A stretch of DNA of 64,000 bases from Phyllobates terribilis. Lineage: Eukaryota. Shown here in pieces: positions 3,763-52,462 of this stretch (positions are counted from its first letter, which is position 1; each line of letters begins with the position of its first letter). Both the position numbers and the translations under genes were made by a program. The DNA lies in contig NW_027362773.1 of NCBI RefSeq assembly GCF_046119375.1, positions 117,304,001-117,368,000 of the forward strand. The letters are read 5' to 3'. The notes beneath the pieces were generated by a model that did not search any database, was not told the origin of the DNA, and saw nothing but the letters and a program-made list of their open reading frames with translations.

Positions 3763-4218
3763 TGAACAGTGTGCAAATTGAAGTGGTCAGTGGGGCGCTA
3801 GAAACTGGATAAGGCGCTGGAAACATTTATATATGCATTTTTATATGTATGTATTTTTAAAGCATTGCCGTTAATGTCTGCATCTTGCATCTTCATAGTA
3901 AGTTTATAATGTGTAGTTATTGACCTGTAATGCTTTTTTAAGTCCCTTTGTTATTAAATTGTAATTGTCTTTTTAATGGTGATTAAGGGGTTAAGTACAA
4001 AATTCTCCCTTGGCACCTCCCATTGAGTTCCTTTGTTTTATGTATAAAAGTGCCTGTTTCTGCCATTTTCCCATAACTCCACCTGATGAAGGCAGCAGAC
4101 CGCTGCAGAAACGCGTTGTGGGCATTAATACTTCAATAAAGAGGTTTGTTTTATCCTTTTCCAGCGTCTTATCCAGTTTCTAGCGCCCCACTGACCACTT
4201 CAATTTGCACACTGTTCA
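3763..4218 (+). mobile_element. Penelope-like retroelement fragment: hammerhead, AATAAA and a 61-bp inverted terminal duplication
   Basis: 3763-3823 is the reverse complement of 4158-4218 (one mismatch seen); hammerhead core at 4083; AATAAA at 4135-4140. Confidence 0.65.
4077..4122 (+). ncRNA. Minimal type I hammerhead ribozyme motif
   Basis: TCCAC-CTGATGA-AG-GCAGC(agacc)GCTGC-A-GAAA-CGCGT-T-GTGGG: stem I, stem II, palindromic stem III, GUU cleavage triplet. Confidence 0.7.
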
Positions 4219-4649: not shown

Positions 4650-5663
4650 ATGTTTAGGAGTCCGGTTGCCACATTGGCATTGCCTCCCTCACAGGGGGTG
4701 ATGCCATGCCTGGAAGCAAGGAGGGGTCCCCTTATCAGGTAACACCAGCATCCAATACATTTCCTGGCTCCAGACCAGAAGGGGGAGCTCTAATCAGGTT
4801 TCAGTGGAACTTCCCCTTTAAATTGGAGCCCGGAGGTGGGGGTTAGAAAAGTCAGTTGGAGACTGGAGAGGAGAGACGAGGGAGAACCTGGGGAAGGGAG
4901 CTGTGACCTAGCTCGCCCCAGAGAAAAGCGCCAGAAACCGGGCACCGGAGTCCGTGGTTGTTCGGGTACTGAAGTACCGGCAGCTAAATCCGGAGGGCGG
5001 GAGACTGCAGGTCTCCTGGCCCCGCGAAACACCCGGCGACTCAACAGCGTACTAGAGCCCGGAGCCGCCACGAAGGAGCCACACCGGAAAAAGGCTCGAG
5101 CTGCCTGCCATACGGGCTAGGATTTAACGATCACTCAGGAAAGAGGGCCGTAGCATAGCTTTAGGCAGCAGGGCCAAAGAGGACAGCGCAGAAGGAAGGC
5201 CTACAACCCCACCTGGTGAGGTGGATCCCAAATTGCTTCTAGGCTGCCCGGATCTCCATTACCTTCTGTTACCAGTGCCCCGGTCTGCACCATCAAACCT
5301 CAAGTAAAGGTAGAGGAAACCGCCATTCTTGTGTCATCTAATCATTGTCTGCACCCTCAGTCCTGCACCCCAACATCCACAATCCCCTACATAAACCATA
5401 CCAGTAGCCATGGGGCCCCGCTCTACCAGTGGGGAGCAAATCCATCCCAGCTGCGTCACCAACATCCCCAGGGGTCTCTTTCAGTAGCGGCGGCGGCCAC
5501 CTATAGCTGCATACCACTGGTGGCGTCACAAAACTTGTCCCCTAAATAAACTGTCCTTTTTACTGACCGCCTAGGGCCCGGGACCAGGTCATGCCCCCGT
5601 GACTATCCCAAGGAACCAACCGATCCGGTGGCGAGTACCCCACGGTCCTAGGGGGCGTGTCAC
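4650..5663 (+). mobile_element. Solo LTR related to 2182-3404 (left end approximate)
   Basis: Shares GCGGCGGC...CATACCAC.GGTGGCGTCAC and the GAGTACCC.ACGG.CC.AGGGGGCG.GTCAC terminus with the first LTR. Confidence 0.55.
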
Positions 5664-10190: not shown

Positions 10191-11606
10191 TTAAAGCAGG
10201 TACAGCAAATTCATAAAAAATCCATACTAGCAACGCGTTTCTGGTCAAGTGCCTTACTCATGGTGTCCTCGATATGATCTTTTGGTTTGCACAAAAGACC
10301 ATCGTTCTCGGCAGCTCATCGTTCTATGTAAACAGGTCTTGTGCTGCTGAGAACAATGGCAGCCTATGATATTAGATCAGTGCGCATCTGATGCCAGGTC
10401 CGCTGGTGTGAACACGCTATTCAGTGACCGTCAGTCAGTAAATATTTACGAAATGGAGATCATTTGACTCTGAAAATTTGTCAAATGTGAAGGCACCCAA
10501 ACTTGTGGTGATTGTGCACAGATGACTGCATTAGTCACATTGTTGATAATTCGCTTCTGGTGACACAAAGACAAAATGAGGAAGGGACACAGATGGACAT
10601 ATAATCCGATGTTGCAACCTGCTTTTAACTGCAGTGTGACCACTTGTCCTGACTTAAAGTCACCGTCCTTTGTTACCGCGTTTCACAACAATGTATGATC
10701 TTTGGAAGTAACCAAAAGTTTTACTATCTTAGTGCAATATCCTTAATATGTTTATACATATAGTTATATTGATTCATTATTTATCCACTTGGATTTATTT
10801 ATTATAAATATGATGATAATTATATTTATATTTATTTATTTATATATTTACCCTTTATGCAATAGCACAGTGCACTTTTTTGTGGATGTATACACGTAAG
10901 ATACATTTGATTTTTTCGCATGTGATACCTGTCCAATTAATAGGTTAACATATTTTACCCTAAGTGTTCTCTGTATGTGAGTGTCTTTATCACCTTTCCC
11001 TTTTGTTACTATTTTTGTGTGTTTTTACTATGTTTTTATTATCAAGTATTGAATAAAAGTGATAAATTGTATTATTATTTTTGGTGGATGTGTCTATCTT
11101 TTGGTTATTTGTTTGGTATTGACACAATCATCGTATTTACTTATATGTATTTGTTGTGAATGTATGATCTTTGTCTAGTATAATGGGCAAAAAGGAGAGG
11201 CGCTGAGCTCCTTGTAAGCCCCTCTTATAGAGTAACTTAAAGGGATATTACCATTTATTTTAATTAATGTACAGTATATATTTAGGTAGCCATAGTAAAA
11301 AATAAGCTATTTTGCTTTTATCAAGCCCCTAGTCCAAAAGGGTATGGAAACAAAAAGGCAAAGATATTTCTTAAATTCCTGCATAAAATACATTCATGTT
11401 TCAAATGCTGCCCAAAACTGGAAGATTCCTTTAAATAGGATCAGTCATCCCTTTTGACATATCTCTATTAGTAAATACTGGTATTTCCTATGAAATAACA
11501 ATTTTGGAGCAACTTTTTCTCAAAAGTCAGCTTTGTACCATTCCTTTGTTATTCCCCTTGGAATGGATTTCTAATTTAGTAACTGGGTATTTTCTTTCCT
11601 CCCGGG

Positions 11607-12175: not shown

Positions 12176-12939
12176 CCGAGTCTCTCCACAGTCTCACACT
12201 ATCAGCACTGATTGAACAGTGAAGGAGCAAAACATCACAGTGAAAAAAAAATGGTAATGTCCAATTGTTAATGTAACCACGCATTTCCAGGTAGAAAAAT
12301 GGAGGATTGGGCACAGCTCAGAGCAAAACTTGCATTTTCTATTATGTGTATTATATGAAAAATTCAAGTAATTACTAAAACAAGATGTATTAATAAGACT
12401 GAAGGGTCATTGAATGAAAACACCAGTGCTTCAGGATCTGCACTAATAATTCACATTTAAAGAAATGTGCAGCACCCTTACTCATGGCTTTCATCCAGAG
12501 ATTGTCCATGAGAAACCACCAACACGTTTCTGGTGTGTATAGCACCCATATTCGTGGTGTATATCCAGGGATTAAGAGAATTATTCACTGCACACTCGAT
12601 GGGTCAAGCAGAAGTGAAGATGTTTATTTATAGTGGTACAAGTGAAACATTCACATAAAAGAAAATTGCTTCTTGATTGTGACTATAAATAAATTACATT
12701 TCAATTTGGTGAATTTTTTTCAAAATGTCACAGTAGAGGAGTAAGGAGAAGCCAGAAGCATGAAGGTATTCTTATAGGATGCAACGCTGCACCACTTGTA
12801 ACACTGTAAATAAACATCTTCACTTCTGCTTGACCCATTGAGTGTACAGTGAATAATTCTCTTGATGTATATTGGGATCCCACTCCCATTTCACGTGCAC
12901 CTCCAAGAAACCTCATGTGTGCACTCCGAATATATACTA

Positions 12940-13840
12940 TATCCAGAGATTGTCCACTAACGCGTTTTGGGTGTGTGTAGCACCCTAGCACCCTTACTCA
13001 TAGCGTATATCTACAGATTGTCCATGAGCAACCAACAATGTGTTTAGGGTGTGTGTAATACCCTTACTCATAGCGTACATCTAGAGAGATTTCATGAAAA
13101 ACATCAACGCGTTTCTGGTGTGTGTAGCACCATTACTCATAAAAACATTTAAAGATTGTCCATGAGAAACCACCAATGTGTTTGGGGTCTGTGTAGCCCC
13201 CTTACATATAGTGTACATTCAGAGATTATCCATGAGAAACCATCAATGTGTTTTGGGTGTGTGAAACCATATACGTGATTCTGGTGTTTTTAGCCCTCTT
13301 ACTCATGGTGTACATCTACAGATTGTCCATGAGAAACCACCAACGCGTTTCTGGTGTGTGTAGCAACCTTACTCATGGTGTATATCCAGAGATTACCCAT
13401 GAAAAACCACCAACGCGTTTTGGGTGTGTGTAGCAACCATACTCAGGGGGTACATCTACAGATTGTTCATGAGAAACCACCAATGCATTTCTGGTGTGTT
13501 TAGCAACCTTACCCATGGTGTACACCTACAGATTGTTCATGAGAAACCTCCAACGCGTTTTGGGGGTGTGTGCAGAAACCATACTCATGGTGTACATCTA
13601 CAGATTGTCCATGAGAAACCACCAAGGCGTTTCTGGTGTGTGTAGCAACCTTACTCATGGTGGATATCCAGAGATTATCCATGAGAAACGACCAACGCGT
13701 TTTGGGTGTGTGTAGCAACCATACTCAGGGGGTACATCCAGAGATTGTCCATGAGAAGCCACCAACACTTTTTAGGTGTGTGTAGCAACCTTACTCATGG
13801 TGGATATCCAGAGATTGTCCATGAGCAGCCGCCATGCGTA
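12940..13840 (-). repeat. ~70-bp tandem array (about 12-13 units) whose minus strand is a minimal hammerhead-like motif; outlying ~1.5 units at 12470-12570
   Basis: The CAACGCGTTT motif and its variants recur at 13341, 13411, 13481, 13551 and onward; unit CCTTACTCATGGTGTACATCTACAGATTGTCCATGAGAAACCACCAACGCGTTTCTGGTGTGTGTAGCA. Confidence 0.9.
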
Positions 13841-15935
13841 AGAGTGCTACATGCACCAGAAATGCATTGCTTGTTTCCCATGGACAATCTGTGGAAGTAC
13901 AGAAACTACTGATTAAATGATTCTTAAATAATCATTGCAGATTTTACCAACGTCTGAGCTGGATACATTGTTATTAATATTTTATGCAGAAAGAATCAGC
14001 ATATCTGTCATACTCGCATGATCAAGAGGAGGAGTGGTAACGTGCAGAGTTTATCATTAGTGCGCGCCAGTTTTCTTTTGCAAATTAATGGTCTAAACCA
14101 GTAAGAGTTGGCATAAGTTTTCTTATTTAGCAATATGTGGCGTATCGGTCACACAGTCTGCACCACTGTGATAATTTTGCCGCATCTACAGACGACCTGG
14201 ACTACATTTCCACTGTCTTAGTAATGTCCTCTAGTGTTTTTTTTTCCCTTCCTTGTCTATTCCACGTACACAATGGGGTACACACAGATGGAGCAAAGCT
14301 GTCGTGTCGCTGTTTGTTTTGTGTATTTGTATAACTCCTAACCTTTAGTAGTTTGACCTATATTCCTATGCAAATCCACAAATAAGATATTGTGATATTT
14401 GTTGTACTATATGACAAGCTCAGCTCCGCTATATCTGGGGACAAATAAAACAGCAAATCTTCAGCAAATAATAAATGGCAGTAAAGTCGTCCGAAACGCG
14501 TTGAGATCTGCATGATTAGCATCTGGATGTACGGAGGGCTGATGAGCCTGGAGGGGGAGTGGAGGCGACAGAAAACGTCTGAAAATGATGAAATGGATTT
14601 GCTCAACATACAATTTCCTCAACACTTGCTGCACTAATGATACATAGAGATATGTGAAAAGTATGATATGCAATAATATACCACATTTCAGGGGGAATAT
14701 ATATGGACGCATTATTTCTAGAGAAAATAAAAAGTAGCAGTGGTGCCAACGCTAAAGATCTGGTGCTTGTGCCGGATTCCTCCGATCTCCAGGTGAGCGT
14801 CACTTTGAGCTGTATCGGCATCAACATTAAGGTAGAGAAAGGGGCCACAGTGCTGCCCGTCCTGTATGCCGCTGTAGGCCTACAAGATGTCAGCGCCCTG
14901 GCACAAGCGGCACAATGATGTCACCTGTGCCCGTCCTTGTTGTGCAGGGGCAGAAAAGAGGATTCGATTACTGGAGTATAAACTTTTTCGTGGCGGATGG
15001 CATTATTACTTTTCGAGTGGGCAAAAAATGGACATCATTACTTTTAAGGAGGAATTAATACTTTAAAAAAGGGGCATTATTTGCTCTACTTGGGCGCTGA
15101 TGGGACATTTTTATTGGGATAGTTTGCAGAGATTGCAACCCATGTTTCGCCGTTGCATTGTGCACCCCCAGGTGGCATTGTACTGACACCTCTGATGATG
15201 TGTGTTTCTATACATCACACTAAATTAATCCATCTATGATTTTTGCATAAAGACAAAAATGCAAGACAAGGCTTTCTTACCCATGTGACCAGAGCTCCAT
15301 CCATTAGGTGGTCAATGGTTGGACCCTGTTGGCCATCCATGTCTTCCAGTTGCTGTGTAAGTAATCAGGTCTCCTCTGCTATCTCCCTGGTACTTTATGA
15401 GACATTTTATCCTTGTCTTGTTGCTCAGTCGTCACCGTCTCCCCTATGTCCTCTGTACATTATACTTCTCAGCGTCACTGTGGTTTCTGCAGATAGATCA
15501 GTTCCTCTCTCTTAAGTCCTGTATCCTCCCTCTTCTTACCACAGTCACCGGAAGTTTTCCATTGCGCAGTCGCAGAGTTTGGCCCAAGATAGGACGACTT
15601 TAATGACAGTAGGTGTATACCCGTAACCACTCGTATAGTATATGGGACGCAGAGTATTTCAGAGATCACTGTTCCCTTTGTGCAGTTTCTACAGGACAAT
15701 GCCCATCAGGCCTCATTCAAGGCTCAGTTCACAGGTTACATATTTGATGTGGATTTTATGCATATATTTTTAGTAATTATTCAATCATTTATTTGCATTT
15801 TTTTTAGAAAATACACAGAAAAAAAAATGCAACAAAAAAATGCAGGTCAACAGTTAAACCTGAATAGATCCTATAGAAGAAGGAAATACCACAGGTTTCA
15901 ACAAGTATATAACAAAATACCTCAAACTATACAAA

Positions 15936-23000: not shown

Positions 23001-26000
23001 ACTTTTACACATTTTTTTCACATTGCACCCACAAACTTAAAGGTGTATTCCCATCTCCAAGATCCTATCCCAATATGTAGTAGGTGTAATAATAATAATA
23101 ATAATAATATTAGCAAATATCTCCAATTAGAAATGTAGTATAGTATTTTTGATTCGCCATCTCTCTTACCTCATGTGCAGGCATTACAGGACCTTAGGTA
23201 TCGATGGTTACGACAACTAGCAACTAGCTAACTGACTTTATCAGTGGACGTAACCATGGATACCTAAGGTCCTGCGATGCCTGCACATGAGGAAAGAGAT
23301 AGCGAATCAGAAAAACTATACAACATTTCTAATTGGAGGTATTAGCTAATATTATTATTATTACACCTACTACATATTGGGATAGGATCTTGGAGATGGG
23401 AATACCCCTTTAAATGCATATTATTGGGATTTTATGTGATATACCAACACAAAGTAGCAAGTATTTGTGAAGTGTTAAGGAAATTATTTTTTCTAATTAT
23501 TTTAAAAATATAAATCTGAAAATTGTCACGTGCATTTGTATTCAGCCCCCTGTAGTCTGATACCCCTAAATAAAATCCTCAGTGACCAATTGCCTCCAGA
23601 AGTCACATAATTAGTAAATTGAGTCCACCTGTGTGTAATTTATTCTCAGTATAACTACAGCTGTTCTGTGAAGGCCTCAGAGGTTTGTTAGAGAACATTA
23701 GGTATCAAACAGCATCAGGAAAACCAAGGAACACACCAGACAGGTCAGGGATAAAGTTGTAGAGAAGAATAAAACAGGGTTAGGTTATAAAAAAATAGCC
23801 CAAGTTCTGAACATCTCACAGATCACTATTCAATTCATCATCCAAAAATGGAAGGAGTATGGTACAACTGCAAACCTATCAAGACATGGCCGTCCACCTA
23901 ACCGGACATCCCAAGCAAGGGGAGCTCTAATTAGAGAAGTAACCAAGAGATCCATGGTCACTCTGGAGAAGCTGCAGAGATCCACAGCTCAGGTGGAAGA
24001 ATCTGTCCACAGGACAACTATTAGTTGTATACTCCACAAATCTGGCCTTTGTGGAAGAATGGCAAGAAGCAAGCCATAAGAAGTCCCGCTGGAAGTTTGG
24101 GCTAAATGCAAAATGCTGTGAGTGGCGGAAAACTTACACTGTACATCACTTAAAAACACCATCCTCACCATTAAACATGATGGTATCAGCATCATGCTGT
24201 GGGGAACATTTTCTTCAGCAGGTATAGGGAAGCTGATCAGAGTTCATAGGAAGATGGATGGATCTACGTAAAGGGCAATCCTGGAGGAAAACCTGTTGGA
24301 GGCTGCAAAAGACTTGAGACTGAGGTGTAGGTTCACCTTCCAGCATCACAGCGACCCTAAACATCCAAGCAGAGCAAAAAAAATCGATGGTTTAGATCAA
24401 AGCATATTCATGTGTGTGAACGACCCAGTCACAGTCCGGACCTAAATCCCATTGAGAATCTGTGGCAAGACTGGAAAATTACTGTTCACAGAATCCTCCA
24501 TCCAGTCTCACTGAGCGACAGCGAGTGTGCAAAGAAGAATGGGCAACAATTTCAGCCTTTAGCTGTGCAAAGCTGGTAGAGACTGACCTCCAAAAAAGTT
24601 TCAGCAGTAATTGCAGCAAAAAGTTGGTCCTACAAAGTACTGACTCAGGGGGGCTGAATACAAATGCACATCATAATTTTCAGATTTATATTTTTAAAAT
24701 ATTTAGAAAACCATGTATCATTTCCTTTACACTTCACAAGTACTTGCTATATCACAATCCCAATAAAATACATCTCAGTTTGTGGGTGTAATGTGAAAAA
24801 ATGTGGATAAGTTCATGGGTATGAACACTTTTTTAAGGCACAGTATAACCTGTACAGTCAGATATAGTTAGATAGCAGTCACGGTGCTAGTTATTTATAG
24901 GTCGTAATTCAGGAGTCATCGTAATTACCTTGGCAAAGTCTCCGCATGGATCAGCCAACATGTGGACCTACAAGAGAAATACAGGATTGATTAGCGGATC
25001 AAGCATTCGATACAAATATGTACAAATCGCTTCTTTCTGATCTTTTGTGATCTAGTTGCAAAGGATCGGAGAAAAGATTGCAGTAACGAAACATGGCATC
25101 ATTTTCTTGAAGTTCACTTTTTTTTTTTTTTTGCAGTATATGTGCTTTAAAAGGAAACAGTCATCAGGTTTTTAGACCCCAAAATAATGTCATCACAGTG
25201 CAGTGCCCATGATGATGATTACTTCCATAACTTTACATTATCAGTCTGTGTCTTCGTCGTCTCATAATCCAGCACTTACAGTTCTCCGGCCTCTCTACCT
25301 CTTTTTCTCCTGCCAGTGATTGACAGGTGGTCACTCTTCTCAATGAAGTGCTCTCCCTGCCGACATCTCCCCCTGGGGTTGGCGCATGTGCAGTAAGTTT
25401 CTGATGACATAGTGAGAGCCGGACTATCCATCTGTGCATGTGTCACCCATAGGAATAACAGTGCCTGCGCGATATGTCAGTGTCTGTGACCTGCTCCACC
25501 ACCTGAGATCTTGCGCATGTGCCATCTTTCCTGACGTGGGCCCATGTGCCGATGGATAGTCCGGCTCTCAGTTCGTCATCAGAACCTTACTGTACACGTG
25601 TCACCCCCGAGAATGACGGCACCTGCACAAGATGTTGGTGTCTGTGACCTGCTCACCCACCTAAGATCTTGCACATGTTCCATCATTAATGATGGGGGCC
25701 CATGCACCAATTGATAGTCCGGCTCTCAGTACGTCATCAGAACCTTACTGCGCATGGGTCTCCCCCCCCGCGAATGACGGCACCTGCGCAAGATGTTAGT
25801 GTCTGTGACCTGCTTCCTCACCTGAGATCTTGTGCATGTGCCATCAAAAGAGATTTTTTTTTTTGAGATGATCAAAAATGATGCGTTTTCTAATTAGAAC
25901 GGCTCCTTCTTTGCTGAGTTTTTGGAGAAGTTCCCCCCCCCCCCTTTATATTTCAGAATTTTTGTGTATGTTTGGTTGGGACCCAGACGGCACGGATCTG

Positions 26001-29000: not shown

Positions 29001-32000
29001 GCGATTTTTTAGCATCACTTGGAAAGTGCTTGTCAACTTGGTCACACTATATAAATCCATGTAAAAGGCATGGATTTTATATAGTGTGACCAAGTTAGTT
29101 AAAAAAAAAAAAAAGAATAAAAATGGTAAAAAATAAAAAAAAAACCATTATACTCACCTTCCGATGGCCCCCAGTCTCCTTATCCGATGCGTCCGGTTTT
29201 CCCGATGTCTCGCAGTGGTGTAAAAGGACCTTCCATGACGTCATTTAGTCATGTGATGGGTCACGCGACCGACGACGTCAGCAGTCGCCTGACCCGTCAC
29301 ATGACTAAATGACGTCATGGCAGGTCCTTTTAGACCATCGTAAGCTGCCGGGAAGCCAGGACGCCCAATAGAGGAGACCGGGGGCCATCGGTAGGTAAGT
29401 ATAATGTATATTTTTTATTTTAATTCTTTTTTTTTATTACAGGTTCTATGGTACCAGAGTCTCCTCTTCTCCAGACCCGGGTACCATCCGCACATTGAAT
29501 CGCTTAATATCTGCATGTGCACATGTAGTCATGCGGATATTAAGTGATTCAATGCAAGTCAATGGCGGTGAAAACGCCACAATTACGCAAAATAATTGGT
29601 GGTGGTGCAGATTTTTCCACAATGATAATCCGCAGCGGAAATTACCACAGCATGTGCACAGCACATGCGGATTATCATTGGGGAACATGGCAGGCCTTCT
29701 ACCAAGCATTTTTTAAGAGTTTCTGCAGCGGAATTGCCGCTGCGGAAACGCTTAAAAAACGCATAGTGGGCACACAGCCTTACACTACTCCAGAGTCTAG
29801 TGATAATGGCTTTACACCACTCCATCCAAAGCTCGGCATTGTGCTTGGTGATGTACGGCTGCATGCAGCTACTCGGCCATGAAGCTCCTGGTGGTAGCGC
29901 AGTATTTGTGCTGATGTTAATACTAGAGGAAGTCTGCTATTATGGAGTCAGCAGAGCAGAGTGCTGGTGACTTTCCTGCCCTCTGCTCCTCAGCACTCGG
30001 CCCCCTGCTCTGTAATGTTACGGGGTCTCCACTTCGTGGCTGAGTTGCTGCGGTTCCTTCCACTTCTCATTAATATCACTCACAGGTGATAGTAGTAGTA
30101 AAGGCAGACGGCATGGCAGGGGGGGGGGGGGGGGCACATGTTATACACTGAGGGAAAAAAGAGGGGCCAGATGTTATACACGAGGGGCCCGGATGTTATG
30201 CGCTAGGGGAGGAACGAGGGGCCCGGATGTTATGCGCTAGGGGAGGAACGAGGGGCCCGGATGTTATGCGCTAGGGGAGGAACGAGGGGCCCGGATGTTA
30301 TGCGCTAGGGGAGGAACGAGGGGCCCGGATGTTATGCGCTAGGGGAGGAACGAGGGGCCCGGATGTTATGCGCTAGGGGAGGAACGAGGGGCCCGGATGT
30401 TATGCGCTAGGGGAGGAACGAGGGGCCCGGATGTTATACGCTAGGGGAGGAACGAGGGGCCCGGATGTTATACGCTAGGGGAGGAACGAGGGGCCCGGAT
30501 GTTATACGCTAGGGGAGGAACAAGGTTATACACTGGTTGGTGATGGGGCCGGTGAAAAACGTGAATTCGATGCTTAGGCGGGTTCCAATATTTTTCTCCT
30601 AATAGCTCATATCTGAGCGCAGGCTGTCTACTATACTATGCACACTACCATTTTAATAAAGACTTGCTTCAGAAGTGGAGACGTTTCGCCTGCTGCACGC
30701 CGCAGTATAACATGCAGCACAGTGACTCATTCTGGACACATAGCTGGCACGCAGGGCACACATTGGCACAGCATTTTTCCTTTACCTTCCCATCGGCTCC
30801 ATGCACTTTTCCCCACTCGCTCACAACAAAGGCATCATTGACTGAGATGCAGGCGAGGACTTCCACCCCACGGGATTTCAGGTCGTCCGCCTGAGTCACG
30901 TATCCAGGCAGGTGTGTCTGGGAAAACACAAAGGATGACAACTAAACATACCAGAATGAACGCTATCGACCTGGAGGGGGCACCACTACATTCATGTTTC
31001 AACACAACAACTCTTAAATGTGGCAAAAAAAAAGTGGGCATGTTTTAAGAGGGAGAGAGTAGTCAACAGGGGCCGCCAAACTTATTAAAGGGTTAGTCTC
31101 ATGTTCTGAACAGAAGAGCACCCCTTTAACTTGATTGACAGTTCGGACCAGTGGCATCGTCGTGCTGCTAGGCCAAAAATTGCACAAAATTATTCAAAGG
31201 ATTAAAGGGAATCAGTCACCGGGTTTTTGCCATCTAATCTGAGAGCAGCATCATGTAAGGGCAGAGACCCCGATTCCTGCAATGTGTCACTTACTGAGCT
31301 ATTTGCTGTAGTTTTGATAAAATCACAGTTTTATCAGCAAGAGATTAACACTAGAGGACTACTAAACCTGCTGCCATGTAGTCCAACCCCGCCCCCACCC
31401 AAGGTTTGCAGCTTTCTGCCTATGCACAGTGTACAGAGAAAGCTGCCAATCAGTGGTGTGACCGGGGTTATACAGGGCTCAGCATTCAGAGAACTTCTAG
31501 ATCTGCAGCAAAGAAAACAGTGATTTTATCAAAACTACAGCAAGCAGCCTAGTAAGTGACATATCACTGGAATCAGGGACTCTGACCCTACATCATGCTG
31601 CTCTTAGATGGGGTAGCAAAAACCTGGTGACAGATTCCCTTTATTAATTTGGGTGCAAAGAAAATGTGTCCCACTGGGTTTCTCTGAAACAAGCCGTTTT
31701 TCATCAAGTTTTTTTAATGGCTTTTTGTGGTACACAAAAAAACACAGCATTTTTCCAGTGCACAAAGAAATTACAGGAAAAACATATGTAAAAAATGATA
31801 ATAAATAATAATACTAAAAACGCTCTAAAAAAAAAAACCTTGTCTTTTAAAATGCTCTAAATGAAGAACGACTCACATGAAACGGAAGTGATGCAACTAA
31901 AAATGTGGTAACCAATAAACACTGTCAGTTTGATGCCCCCTGCGCTGCCCGTTACTCCACTGGTTACGAAAGTTTCTTTAAGTGTCATGTTGGGCAATAA

Positions 32001-33713
32001 GAAACCAGTCAGAGCCGAGAGTCATTTCCACACCGGCCCCATAGCTGTAATTACTGCTACAGAAGTGTTGGAAAATCCCATCACAAATTATTCTCAAGAG
32101 AAATGACGGCTCTCAGGGATGTCTACGACCAATCCACAAGATAAACTGGACTGGGGTATCTGGTAACCCGAGTGCCTACGATCCTGAAATATATACAGTC
32201 GTAGGACGACCCGCCACCAGAGACCTGGACGAGACGACCCGCCACCAGAGACCCGGAGGGGACGACCCGCCACCAGAGACCTGGAGGGGAGGACTACCGA
32301 ATGAGCACCCAGGTGCACTTTTATCCATTGCATTGCTAGATCTGTGTCAGGTACTTCTCCTCTTGGAACAGACAGAACTTACCTTGGAGCACCCTGGAGT
32401 AAAAGCCCCTGGAACGCCAAACAGCACCCCTTTCTTGTTGCCGAACACATCCCTGACGCTTTTCTTGTTTGCTGGACCTCCATCAAAGATCGGCACATCC
32501 GGTAGAGCATCTCCAACCTTGAAGAGAAATCACCTATCAGACATGTCGGCTTCTTGTTCGCCTCGTTCAGCTTCTTATAGGAAAAATGGTCGGACCCCTG
32601 ACTATAATGGGCCAGGCATACCTCCACATTTGGCATTGACCCTAACATTAGAGCCCAGCATTGACCACCTGACAAAACGACAGCTTCTCGGCTGCTAACA
32701 AATTAGCAGAAGTGATTTGGAGCGGTAAAAAACAGACCTCAGTGAAGGCACGGATCGGATTTTTTAAACTGTAGAATACAAGAAAGTCATGTAGGGAATG
32801 TGGAAAAACCGGGGCGGTAATTGTGGAGCAGTGTTGTCACCAAGCCCACCCATAGATACAGAAGCCACACGTTTTGTGACCCTTAAAATCAGTGTCACAA
32901 CTGAATGTGTCTCAGACCCCTTCCACCTTATGCGTTTCGGACCCATACGATCCTACGCATTTCAGACCCCCTACGACCTAACACGTTTCAGACCCCTACG
33001 CGTTTTAGACCCCATACAACCTTACATGTTTCGGACCCCTACGACCATACTTATAGTTAAAAAAAAATAAATTTACTTATATTTTTTCCTTTTTTTGGAG
33101 CAGGATTTTTTCCTATATTTGCTGCCGGGGCCCCGCTATATACCCTCATGACCCCGTGGACACATTTGCCCTGACATTTTTTGGGTGAGCCGATGTTTTT
33201 TTTTCTCTTCTTTCCTACTAAAACAGGCGCATGTCACATCCGTATGCTTATTTAGACCAGAATTAACCTCCTCCTAAACTTTCCGCGCCGTTTTATAAAA
33301 CCTTTTCACATTTTTTAGGTAGAGATGCAATCGTACAGACGTCGCACTTCACGCCAAAGGGTCATCCGCACCCCGTCCTCTGCAAATTTACATTTTGGTG
33401 CAGAAACTAAAAATTGATGTAATAAATCGAGGAAACCATGAGCGATAAAAGCCATGGGGGGATTTCCGTGTCTTGTGGCTGAATCACTGGCACTACAGCC
33501 ATTATTACACACCAGCACTGATATATGAGCTATTATTAGCACAGCACGATATTATCAGCCCTGATAATGCGCCGCACAGACCGCATGTGCCCTAGGGTCC
33601 AATGTACACGGCGCGGTTACCTTGATAGACATGGCTCTGCTCCACACTCCGCTCCTGGCGCCTGAACGCGGCGGTGACAGGAGGAGGAATGATACGGGCA
33701 ACCGAAGAGCCAT
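19931..33713 (-). CDS. PRDX5: Peroxiredoxin-5, spliced CDS, 189 aa: join(33621-33713, 32383-32517, 30786-30917, 24929-24967, 22083-22147, 19931-20036)
   Basis: All six exons have GT-AG boundaries and join in frame; PGAFTPGCSKTHLPG peroxidatic motif, GLTCSLA resolving Cys, C-terminal SQL; head-to-head with TRMT112 as in other vertebrates. Confidence 0.97.
20241..20803 (-). mobile_element. Solo LTR in PRDX5 intron 5
   Basis: TGTCA...TGACA termini; TTGC on both flanks; reverse complement begins TGTCACGGGT.TGTCAG like 11607. Confidence 0.7.
22083..22147 (-). CDS. PRDX5: PRDX5 exon 5 (AAGLLLEKKELEDLFGNKRCK)
   Basis: CAG acceptor, GTGAAA donor, matches the PRDX5 FGN-R--R segment. Confidence 0.93.
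22969..24843 (+). mobile_element. Degenerate Tc1 transposon in PRDX5 intron 4
   Basis: TA|CAGTGCCTTGAAAAAGTATTCAT...GGCACAG|TA; decayed transposase including the AGTCCGGACCTAAATCCCATTGAGAATCTGTGG (SPDLNPIENLW) block. Confidence 0.9.
23041..23409. mobile_element. T2/Kolobok-type MITE nested in the Tc1
   Basis: TTAA|AGG...CCT|TTAA ends; long internal inverted arms. Confidence 0.85.
24929..24967 (-). CDS. PRDX5: PRDX5 exon 4 (VHMLADPCGDFAK)
   Basis: 39-nt exon, TAG acceptor, GTAATT donor. Confidence 0.95.
25388..25845. repeat. 158-bp tandem repeat (~2.6 copies) preceded by an inverted partial copy
   Basis: Unit starts at 25441, 25599 and ~25757; 25388-25440 is complementary to ~25545-25598. 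Confidence 0.75.
26102..26454. mobile_element. PIF/Harbinger-like MITE
   Basis: TAA|GGCTATATTCACACATG...CATGTGTGAACATAGCC|TAG. Confidence 0.7.
27109..27550. mobile_element. Left part of a TA-target Tc1/mariner/pogo-type MITE with a GC-rich 94-bp-arm palindrome
   Basis: TA|CCATATTTTTCGGAC.ATAAGACGCAC TIR as at 39434 and 47124; arms 27341-27434 and 27456-27550. Confidence 0.75.
27545..28584 (+). mobile_element. 5'-truncated Tc1 (same family as 17864-19176), frameshifted transposase
   Basis: FTDES, QDNARPH, DLNPIDHIW motifs; right TIR GTTCCCTTTATTTTTTTGAGCAGTG|TA. Confidence 0.93.
28820..29779. mobile_element. Harbinger-like MITE, inverted copy of 34411-35265 (left terminus degenerate)
   Basis: Ends GTGGGCACACAGCC|TTA; long reverse-complement similarity to 34411-35265. 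Confidence 0.8.
30181..30520 (+). repeat. 34-bp minisatellite, 10 copies
   Basis: CGAGGGGCCCGGATGTTATGCGCTAGGGGAGGAA; last three units read TATACG. Confidence 0.95.
30786..30917 (-). CDS. PRDX5: PRDX5 exon 3 (THLPGYVTQADDLKSRGVEVLACISVNDAFVVSEWGKVHGADGK)
   Basis: ORF track 30669-30941; CAG acceptor, GTAAAG donor. Confidence 0.97.
31206..31640. mobile_element. T2/Kolobok-type MITE in PRDX5 intron 2
   Basis: TTAA|AGGGAATCAGTCACC...GGTGACAGATTCCCT|TTAT. Confidence 0.75.
32383..32517 (-). CDS. PRDX5: PRDX5 exon 2 (VGDALPDVPIFDGGPANKKSVRDVFGNKKGVLFGVPGAFTPGCSK)
   Basis: AAG acceptor, GTAAGT donor, contains the peroxidatic Cys. Confidence 0.97.
33621..33713 (-). CDS. PRDX5: PRDX5 exon 1 coding part (MALRLPVSFLLLSPPRSGARSGVWSRAMSIK): mitochondrial leader plus second in-frame ATG at 33632
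   Basis: Arg/Ser/Leu-rich leader with no acidic residues; MSIK|GTAACC corresponds to human MAPIK|V. Confidence 0.88.
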
Positions 33714-33959: not shown

Positions 33960-47625
<13,666 letters not shown>

Positions 47626-49086: not shown

Positions 49087-49242
49087 CAGAAACTTGTCCA
49101 ATATTGATCTGAGTGTCAGATCAAAGTCACCAGTGCAACAGAAACTTGTCCAATATTGATCTGAGTGTCAGATCAAAGTCACCAGTGCAACAGAAACTTG
49201 TCCAATATTGATCTGAGTGTCAGATCAAAGTCACCAGTGCAA
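49087..49242 (+). repeat. 52-bp unit, three identical copies
   Basis: CAGAAACTTGTCCAATATTGATCTGAGTGTCAGATCAAAGTCACCAGTGCAA at 49087, 49139 and 49191. Confidence 0.95.
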
Positions 49243-51483: not shown

Positions 51484-52066
51484 GGTACACTTGTCGAATA
51501 AGGAAGGATTTTACATTTAGAAGTGCGGAATCGTGTGGATCTCAAGGAACTAATAAGCAGGGCTGTGGAGTCAGTAAGCCAAACTTCCAAATCCTCAATT
51601 TCCATGCCTCCGACTCCACGACTCCCTCATACATGGCTCATGTTTAAGTGATAAATTTACTGTAGCACAGATTCATCAACTAAAAGTCTAGACCCTTAGA
51701 TCAGGAATAGGACAGACATTTATAGGACATTTCATAACTTTCCCAAATTCTTATGAAAAAATATTCCCCACAAACTGCATTGAACTACTGTACCCAATGT
51801 ATTATATATTTTAGGAGTCTGAATGGGTCCATTTTATACCGACTCCACCAAAATGGGCTCTGACTCAGACTCCACAGCCCTGCTAATAAGTAGCATTACC
51901 AAGCCTGACGGCCACCAGCTAACGCTCTACCAGTGCTGCCTGGTGGCCGGAAGACTCCTTGCACATCAACTATGGAGTAGTGAGATATACTTCTTTTTTT
52001 CCTTCTTTTGATTGCCTGGCCTGGCTTGATGTCTCCCCAAGTTGCCTAATCAAAAGAGGAGCCATT

Positions 52067-52462
52067 GCTGCAGTCAGGGAAGGGGCGGTTCTCGTGGCTT
52101 TAGTCCTACGACCATAAATCAGCATGGATGCAGTCAGAGAATCGGTGGTTCTCATGGCTCCAGTCCTACGACCATGGATGCAGTCAGGGAACCAGCAGTT
52201 CTCATGGCTCCAGTCCTACGACCGCAAATTAGCATGGATGCAGTCAGGGAAGGGGTGGTTCTCATGGCTCCAGCCCTAAGATTGCAAATGAGCATGGATG
52301 CAGTCCGGGAAGGGGCAGTTCTCATGGCTCCAGTCCTAAGATTACAAATGAGCATGGATGCAGTCAGAAAATCGGCAGTTATTGTGGCTCCAGTCCTTCG
52401 ACCACAAATGAGCATGGATGCAGTCAGGGAAGGGGCGGTTCATGTAGCTCCAGTCCTACGCG
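52067..52462 (+). repeat. 60-bp minisatellite, ~7 copies (one shortened by 10 nt)
   Basis: GCATGGATGCAGTCAGGGAAGGGGCGGTTCTCATGGCTCCAGTCCTACGACC...; periodic translation MDAVRE..VLMAPVLR. Confidence 0.9.

What the first reader, a model, noticed from the sequence alone, without database searches (positions are those of the whole stretch)
12940..13840. Tandem array of minimal hammerhead ribozymes with an A3-U8 swap of the conserved C3-G8 pair
Seen: on the minus strand the best unit (13380 to 13338) reads CACC-AUGAGUA-A-GGU...ACC-A-GAAA-CGCGU-U-GGUG. That gives a 4-bp stem I (CACC/GGUG), a core in which C3 and G8 have both changed to A3 and U8 so the 3-8 pair is kept, a short stem II, the palindromic stem III ACGCGU and a GUU triplet. 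About 12 units recur every 70-71 nt. Variants CCAGAAAC and CCCAAAAC suggest CpG decay from an ancestral GGGUG/CACCC-GAAA stem II, and some units have C3. Known: C3-G8 is a Watson-Crick pair in the active hammerhead fold; palindromic stem III hammerheads cleave as dimers; tandem hammerhead satellites occur in newts and schistosomes. Inference: a frog ribozyme satellite or retrozyme-like multimer whose transcript could self-process into ~70-nt monomers or circles. Most units look decayed.
Basis: partly seen in the sequence, partly recalled or inferred. Interest (0 to 1): 0.85.

Follow-up and report, generated by a model that had tools for sequence, protein, structure and literature searches.

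The report
Decayed hammerhead-type repeat array in frog
A 70-bp tandem repeat in a frog genome is built from a small self-cleaving-RNA (hammerhead) module of the kind carried by Penelope-like jumping genes, with an unusual but structure-preserving swap in its core; nearly all copies are now broken and no RNA from the array was seen.

Summary
About 12 units of 70 bp lie at 12959-13825 on the minus strand. A further unit lies at 12488-12560 and an inverted one at 13829-13901.

The hammerhead likeness is more than chance. A descriptor wide enough to accept Penelope-type minimal hammerheads hits the window twice and hits 300 shuffles never. The two hits are this unit and a canonical-core copy at 4079-4121. 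They share length, spacing, the unpaired A after A9, the extra A before G12, the palindromic CGCG and an identical 12-mer. The helices and the 3-8 pair differ by compensated changes.

The array is nevertheless a relic:
- One unit of 15 is complete, and its neighbours are broken.
- Core positions are no better kept than the rest.
- Units with a C3/U8 mismatch and no G12 were copied along in 140/282-bp blocks.
- The hammerhead fold is energetically poor.
- Three RNA runs show no transcript of the array.

The proposed CpG-decay history is not supported: A3 and CAGAAA are ancestral.

Two unchecked notes of this scan report A3-U8 hammerheads elsewhere in this genome.

The parts
12959..13825 (-). 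Tandem array of 12 units of about 70 bp. Two unit types alternate in the younger half (13332-13823). The older half (12959-13263) is more diverged.
13338..13380 (-). The only complete hammerhead-type module: helix I CACC/GGUG, core A3 U4 G5 A6 G7 U8 A9, unpaired A, helix II GGU/ACC, extra A, G12 A13 A14, A15.1-CGCG-U16.1, U17. The predicted cut is after 13342.
13614..13683 (-). Second-best unit. The core and GAAA are intact, but the palindrome is broken (CGCC).
13402..13471 (-). Example of the second unit type: C3 opposite U8 (a mismatch) and A in place of G12. It was copied together with the first type in 140/282-bp blocks. Units 13753 and 13613 are the same type.
13829..13901 (+). One unit in inverted orientation, abutting the array head to head. 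Its module has A6 changed to C and helix I broken.
12466..12560 (-). Outlying unit plus a partial unit. The array continues here, on the far side of the nested hairpin element. The module has U4 changed to C.
12867..12958 (-). Degenerate unit between the nested element and the array.
12571..12866 (.). Unrelated palindromic element (74-nt arms, 93% complementary) inserted into the array. It is not part of the repeat family.
10222..10266 (-). Dispersed single copy of the same A3-U8 module. It shares two exact 15-mers with the array unit. Its helix II tip, loop and flanks differ, and helix I is broken.
4079..4121 (+). Canonical-core (CUGAUGA) minimal hammerhead of the same architecture, used as the comparison.

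Best explanation
The 70-bp unit is a 43-nt hammerhead-type module plus a 27-nt spacer. The module belongs to the dimer-dependent minimal hammerheads found with Penelope-like retroelements and their non-autonomous derivatives (retrozymes). It differs in having A3-U8 where the consensus has C3-G8.

Elsewhere in this genome the same sequence occurs as a short head-to-head inverted pair of units. At this locus one arm was multiplied at the DNA level. First it formed a two-unit block in which one unit was already dead. Then blocks of 140 and 282 bp were copied.

Since then the copies have drifted, mostly by CpG decay. One complete module is left, with broken neighbours. Today the array is most likely an inert relic that does not process itself.

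Shown here: the array, the shared architecture, the decay, the block-wise copying, and the absence of transcripts in the runs examined. Inferred: descent from a mobile hammerhead-bearing element, and past cleavage as dimers.
For: - Architecture. The widened descriptor hits only 4079-4121 (+) and 13380-13338 (-), against 0 hits in 300 shuffles. Both are 43 nt, with 18 nt between A9 and G12 and an identical AGAAACGCGTTG.
- Pairing. On the alignment of the canonical copy with 7 family copies, 79.5% of cells pair, against 22-49% when partners are slid. Five pairs change on both sides, including 3-8.
- Family traits. The published traits match: an unpaired nucleotide between 9 and 10.1, helix I of 4-5 bp, palindromic 15.2-16.2, action as dimers, pairs of motifs on opposite strands, and a natural U3-A8 variant.
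- Module conservation. The dispersed copy near 10.24 kb keeps only the two core-bearing 15-mers.
- Decay. Only 1 of 15 copies is complete. Core columns diverge by 11.7% and the rest by 9.7%, p=0.54.
- DNA-level copying. Periods 140 and 282 fit better than 70, and the dead units recur in register.
- Fold. The hammerhead fold scores -1.7 against an MFE of -7.2 kcal/mol for the array unit, and -10.7 against -11.9 for the canonical copy.
- Expression. No array transcript appears in three RNA runs. DNA contigs from other loci join a unit directly to an inverted unit.
Against: - No Rfam hammerhead model matches at E up to 10. The canonical-core copy is missed as well, so this counts for little.
- Helix II is 3-4 bp, where the published family has 6-8.
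- An extra A sits between helix II and G12, unlike the published G10.1-C11.1 next to G12.
- No Penelope reverse transcriptase lies in the window, and no target-site duplication was found.
- Descent from a Penelope-like element is inferred from architecture alone.
- The RNA runs are small (about 200 million letters each), are kept only as contigs, and would miss 70-nt RNAs.
- The pair counts use a structure derived from these same sequences, and most rows are related copies.
Confidence: 0.65

Rival explanations
1. The array is a working retrozyme-like element. Its transcripts fold adjacent units into double hammerheads through the ACGCGU palindrome. The A3-U8 cores then cut after GUU and release 70-nt or 140-nt RNAs that may circularise.
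For: The tandem layout supplies the two copies that a dimer-type motif needs. Swapped 3-8 pairs are reported active in vitro, and U3-A8 occurs in nature. Vertebrate retrozyme units of 51-972 bp are reported. An intact core could in principle cut the intact site of a neighbouring dead unit (inference from the double-hammerhead topology).
Against: Only one complete module exists, and neither neighbour is complete, so the published criterion of two consecutive complete motifs fails. The hammerhead fold is 5.5 kcal/mol above the MFE. Two local hairpins compete with it: CUCAUGG/CCAUGAG and CACCAG/UUGGUG. The core is not preferentially conserved. No transcripts were seen. Even canonical Penelope-type motifs cleave poorly in vitro.
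Confidence: 0.08
2. The likeness to a hammerhead is coincidence. The unit is simply the arm of a fold-back DNA transposon (MITE-like), one arm of which grew into a satellite, with no ribozyme ancestry.
For: An inverted unit sits at the array's end, and short inverted pairs occur at other loci. Satellites grown from transposon arms are a known theme (paper titles listed, not read; an unchecked scan note s1-215406 describes a similar case 1.9 Mb away). No Rfam hit was found. Helix II is weak and there is an extra A before G12.
Against: The full descriptor is not expected by chance (0 in 300 shuffles), and its only other hit is a canonical-core hammerhead with the same spacing and the same oddities. 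All differences in paired positions between the two are compensated, while U4 G5 A6 A9 G12 A13 A14 A15.1 U16.1 U17 are the same. The dispersed copy keeps only the core halves. No target-site duplication was found for the supposed transposon.
Confidence: 0.17
3. The array serves another purpose, such as a protein-binding or regulatory repeat of the host locus, and the module is incidental.
For: None directly. This reading is kept only because function was not tested.
Against: Units diverge by 10-25% with CpG decay. The array is interrupted by an inserted element. It sits at single-copy depth, and no transcripts were seen.
Confidence: 0.05

Closest known systems
Minimal hammerheads of Penelope-like elements (Cervera & de la Pena 2014, PMC4209133; also Lunse et al., cited in PMC6765202, not read)
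   Same: Short helix I (4 bp), an unpaired nucleotide after A9, GAAA, one A15.1-U16.1 pair around a palindromic CGCG so that two copies must pair, a GUU site, occurrence as dispersed single copies and as inverted pairs, and very high numbers in frog genomes.
   Different: A3-U8 instead of C3-G8. Helix II has 3-4 bp instead of 6-8. An extra A lies between helix II and G12, a feature shared with the canonical-core copy in this window. No Penelope coding sequence is nearby.
U3-A8 core variant of the Schistosoma mansoni Cercyon element and of other hammerheads (PMC4209133, PMC3088659)
   Same: A Watson-Crick-preserving exchange of the 3-8 pair in a natural hammerhead family.
   Different: The pair here is A-U, not U-A. 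No paper in the searchable library pairs the term 'A3-U8' with hammerhead. Activity is untested here.
Non-LTR retrozymes of animals (Li, Clavereau & Pollet 2026 preprint, doi 10.64898/2026.07.22.740005)
   Same: Tandem repeats carrying one hammerhead per unit and thought to derive from Penelope-like elements. The 70-bp unit lies within the reported 51-972 bp range.
   Different: The published 'active' criterion of two consecutive complete motifs is not met. The array grew in 140/282-bp DNA blocks that include dead units. No RNA was seen.
Newt satellite 2 and schistosome Sm-alpha hammerhead repeats (own knowledge; general description in PMC4209133)
   Same: A tandem genomic repeat with a type I hammerhead whose weak helix III favours action as a dimer.
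   Different: Those have the canonical core, helix I of about 6 bp and helix II of 4 bp with loop-loop contacts, and units of about 330 nt. This genome has its own 332-bp family of that kind according to unchecked scan notes.
Satellites grown from the arms of fold-back or MITE-like transposons, such as Xenopus Xstir (own knowledge; paper titles, not read)
   Same: A tandem array whose unit equals one arm of a short inverted-repeat element, with an inverted unit at one end.
   Different: Here the arm itself is a hammerhead-type module. No target-site duplication or transposase-type terminus was found.

Membership tests
Hammerhead ribozyme (core consensus) | U4 G5 A6 and A9 present | tested here: met
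   Present in the best unit and in 11 of 15 family copies. Lost in 13541 (A6G), 13234, the inverted copy (A6C) and the left copy (U4C).
Hammerhead ribozyme (core consensus) | C3 and G8, which pair in the active fold | tested here: inconclusive
   The identity is not met: U8 is found in all 15 copies, and A3 in 12. The pair is kept as A-U. Three units have a C3/U8 mismatch. The literature reports swapped pairs as active in vitro, but nothing was assayed here.
Hammerhead ribozyme (core consensus) | G12 A13 A14, A15.1-U16.1, and H17 that is not G | tested here: met
   Met in the best unit. GAAA is present in 7 of 15 copies; the others read AAAA or AAA.
Hammerhead ribozyme (core consensus) | Three helices around the core, with the hammerhead fold competitive | tested here: not met
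   Helix I has 4 bp and helix II 3 bp, and helix III can form only between two copies. The hammerhead fold scores -1.7 against an MFE of -7.2 kcal/mol, and competing hairpins take up the core and G12.
Hammerhead ribozyme (core consensus) | Match to Rfam hammerhead covariance models | tested here: inconclusive
   No match at E up to 10. The canonical-core copy at 4079 is also missed.
Hammerhead ribozyme (core consensus) | Site-specific self-cleavage | not testable with these tools
   Needs in vitro transcription. No read ends at the predicted site were seen, but no transcript was seen at all.
Penelope-type minimal hammerhead | [quoted passage not shown] | tested here: met
   An A follows A9 in the best unit, and A or U in all copies. 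The trait is stated in PMC4209133.
Penelope-type minimal hammerhead | G10.1-C11.1 directly next to G12, and a long helix II (6-8 bp) | tested here: not met
   A G-C pair opens helix II, but an extra A separates it from G12. Helix II has only 3-4 bp. The canonical-core copy at 4079 has the same extra A and a 5-bp helix.
Penelope-type minimal hammerhead | Helix I of 4-5 bp and palindromic 15.2-16.2 | tested here: met
   CACC/GGUG and CGCG. The palindrome is kept as UGCA in two copies and lost as CACA, CGCC or GUGU in others.
Penelope-type minimal hammerhead | Lies in a terminal repeat of a Penelope-like element | tested here: inconclusive
   No reverse transcriptase or GIY-YIG ORF was found in the 64-kb window. 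The paper says most such motifs are solitary.
Non-LTR retrozyme | Tandem units with at least two consecutive complete hammerheads | tested here: not met
   The single complete unit (13401-13332) lies between a unit lacking G12 and a rearranged unit. The criterion is given.
Non-LTR retrozyme | Transcribed, giving unit-length linear or circular RNA | tested here: inconclusive
   None of three same-species RNA runs holds the array. One 42-nt, 88% match lies in an unrelated contig. The runs are small, and contigs cannot show small RNAs.
Fold-back / MITE-derived satellite | Inverted terminal copies, the same element present at other loci, and a target-site duplication | tested here: inconclusive
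   An inverted unit is present, and other loci join a unit to an inverted unit. No duplication longer than a 6-mer was found at the ends.

The most novel reading that the evidence does not exclude
The A3-U8 module is a catalytically competent, naturally selected hammerhead core variant that spread through this frog's genome on a small mobile element. Tandem copies like this one can then be cut by double hammerheads into 70- or 140-nt RNAs. These would be among the smallest self-processing retrozyme units, and the first natural A-U form of the 3-8 pair.
Probability: 0.08. Interest if true: 0.7.

Novelty: new variant of a known kind. Interest (0 to 1): 0.36.

Why it matters
The 3-8 pair is the one Watson-Crick pair inside the hammerhead core. 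Natural families that swap it test how far the catalytic core depends on base identity as opposed to pairing. U3-A8 families are documented. An A3-U8 family that spread in a vertebrate genome would add the other transition-type pair, and it would give a natural series (the canonical copy and the variant copy in one window) for kinetic comparison. The locus also shows, in small format, how a ribozyme-bearing mobile module can turn into an ordinary satellite by DNA-level copying once the ribozyme no longer matters. As it stands, this array is a relic, and the claim of catalysis is untested.

Tried and rejected
- Rfam scans of the array, the whole window and a 201-nt slice found no hammerhead model match. 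This was rejected as evidence because the canonical-core copy is missed too.
- My first reading was a plain MITE-derived satellite with a chance hammerhead likeness. I dropped it as the main reading after finding the canonical-core twin at 4079 and running the shuffle test.
- A search for more copies in the window with a covariance model, filters off, found none beyond those known. The marginal hit at 4888-4938 is not a hammerhead.
- A search for a Penelope reverse transcriptase found none.
- A search for target-site duplications found none.
- The papers on 3-8 exchanges (PMC1986816) and on dimer-cleaving Penelope hammerheads (PMC5785218) are not held.
- No supplements are held for PMC4209133, so the frog consensus families could not be compared.
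- A look-up of scan notes by sequence came back blank.

Full report
**1. What is there**

On the minus strand, twelve units of about 70 bp run from 13823 down to 12959. One is irregular at 97 nt, and a degenerate unit follows down to 12867. Tandem Repeats Finder gives 83% matches at period 70, 86% at 140 and 90% at 282 for the younger half (13279-13825). The older half (12986-13263) gives 75%.

A 296-bp palindromic element (arms 12571-12644 and 12793-12866, 93% complementary) is inserted into it. Beyond that element lie another unit and a partial unit (12466-12560). At the other end, one unit lies in inverted orientation (13829-13901), head to head with the array.

**2.

It is the only complete copy.

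- Of 15 family copies, 11 keep U4 G5 A6 A9 and 7 keep GAAA. Several have lost the CGCG palindrome.
- The second unit type (13753, 13613, 13471) has C3 opposite U8 and A instead of G12.
- U8 never varies, so the array holds no 3-8 covariation.
- A3 is found in all older and outlying copies. C3 is therefore a later change that breaks the pair.
- CAGAAA is found in both outlying copies, in the dispersed copy and in the canonical copy. The A before G12 is therefore ancestral, and the proposed CpG-decay history from CCCGAAA is not supported.

**3. Is it more than chance?**

At first I read the locus as a transposon-arm satellite with a chance likeness. That changed on finding, in the same window, a canonical-core minimal hammerhead at 4079-4121 (+): CCAC-CUGAUGA-AG-GCAGC(AGACC)GCUGC-A-GAAA-CGCG-U-U-GUGG (following the scan note s1-196890).

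- It and the array unit are both 43 nt, with 18 nt between A9 and G12.
- Both have an unpaired A after A9 and an extra A before G12.
- Both contain AGAAACGCGTTG.
- A descriptor wide enough to take both hits the window exactly twice and hits 300 dinucleotide shuffles never.
- Between the two copies, every unpaired core position except the free N7 is identical. Helix I, helix II and the 3-8 pair differ by compensated changes.
- On the alignment of the canonical copy with seven family copies, 79.5% of cells pair, against 22-49% when partners are slid. Five pairs change on both sides. This count leans on a structure taken from these sequences and on related rows.

A dispersed copy at 10222-10266 (-) shares only two exact 15-mers with the array unit, and these are the two core-bearing halves. 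Its helix II tip, loop and both flanks differ. That is how a conserved RNA module behaves.

**4. What the literature says**

Cervera & de la Pena 2014 (PMC4209133) define the minimal hammerheads of Penelope-like elements as follows:

- helix I of 4-5 bp
- an unpaired nucleotide between 9 and 10.1
- G10.1-C11.1
- a long helix II
- palindromic 15.2-16.2
- action as dimers
- low activity in vitro

They count about 9,000 such motifs in Xenopus tropicalis. They note pairs of motifs on opposite strands 100-700 bp apart. They also describe a natural U3-A8 core variant with about 1,300 copies in Schistosoma.

Perreault et al. 2011 (PMC3088659) also report natural U3-A8. They state that swapped 3-8 pairs were shown to be active in vitro. 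They add that helix II can be as short as two pairs, or can start with a mismatch.

A 2026 preprint derives animal non-LTR retrozymes from Penelope-like elements. It reports unit lengths of 51-972 bp, and it calls an array active only if two consecutive units have complete motifs.

No paper in the searchable library pairs 'A3-U8' with hammerhead.

**5. Why the array is a relic**

- The single complete unit has broken neighbours.
- Core columns diverge by 11.7% and the other columns by 9.7% (Fisher p=0.54).
- Dead units recur in register in the 140- and 282-bp blocks. Recent growth was therefore by DNA-level copying of blocks, not by amplification of working 70-nt monomers.
- The hammerhead fold of the best unit scores -1.7 kcal/mol against an MFE of -7.2. 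In context, the hairpins CUCAUGG/CCAUGAG and CACCAG/UUGGUG tie up U4-A6, G12, U17 and the 3' strand of helix I. For the canonical copy, the hammerhead fold (-10.7) is close to the MFE (-11.9).
- The CpG-rich palindrome has decayed to UGCA or CACA in many units.

**6. RNA and DNA reads**

No RNA run is listed as holding the stretch. Three same-species RNA runs gave only two things. One was a 42-nt, 88% match to 13338-13379 inside an otherwise unrelated 151-nt contig. The others were short matches to the nested palindromic element. These runs are small and held as contigs, so absence is weak evidence.

A DNA run covers the array at single-copy depth (about 8-10). It also holds contigs from other loci that join a unit directly to an inverted unit (joints 13378 to 13839 and 12535 to 13839). 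The basic form of the element elsewhere is thus a short head-to-head pair, and this locus has one arm expanded.

**7. Surroundings**

No Penelope reverse transcriptase is in the window. The only solid protein-family match is a LAP2alpha-like exon at 42991-43926 (-). Model R1 with filters off finds no further copies in the window. No target-site duplication was found at 12466/13901.

**8. Verdict**

The hammerhead reading is right as to kind and ancestry (about 0.8). It is probably wrong as to present activity (about 0.1).

The locus is a decayed, DNA-amplified array of a Penelope-type minimal hammerhead module with an A3-U8 core. That makes it a new variant of a known kind, of moderate interest. 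Two other unchecked first-reader notes in this genome (s1-196815, s1-204952) report A3-U8 hammerhead variants on other pieces, one of them in a fold-back. This fits a dispersed family, but I did not test it.

Noticed in passing
window 12571-12866: A 296-bp palindromic element with 74-nt arms at 93% complementarity, inserted into the array. Its Rfam matches to the plant miRNA families MIR2646 and MIR6217 are far below their gathering scores and simply reflect the long hairpin. DNA contig depth reaches 50-64 against about 8.7 in the flanks, so it is a multi-copy family. Short pieces of one arm (12820-12853) occur in RNA contigs of two runs.
   Followed up: partly
window 3763-4218, motif at 4079-4121 (+): A canonical-core minimal hammerhead (CUGAUGA ... 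GAAA-CGCG-U-U) inside a roughly 456-bp element with inverted ends of about 55 nt. The hammerhead fold (-10.7) is close to the MFE (-11.9 kcal/mol). Rfam hammerhead models do not detect it even in an 801-nt search at E up to 10.
   Followed up: partly
window 14474-14504 (+): A relic resembling the 3' half of the same module (GUCGUCC-GAAA-CGCGU-U-GA), about 570 bp beyond the inverted unit. No recognisable 5' core lies upstream. Model R1 scores it at only 8.3 bits.
   Followed up: partly
window 42991-43926 (-): An ORF with a LAP2alpha domain match (Pfam PF11560, E 1.9e-12), probably an exon of a thymopoietin/LAP2-like host gene.
   Followed up: no
window 30180-30525, 49087-49242, 25474-25846, 52062-52460: Other tandem arrays: 34 bp x 10 at 99% matches, 52 bp x 3 at 100%, 158 bp x 2.3, and 60/110 bp x 3-7. 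None was examined.
   Followed up: no
window 32912-33043 (-): A short tandem repeat (periods 25 and 43) containing GGGGUCUGAAACGUGUUAGG. It was picked up by the GAAACGCGTT search with one mismatch. No hammerhead core is visible.
   Followed up: no
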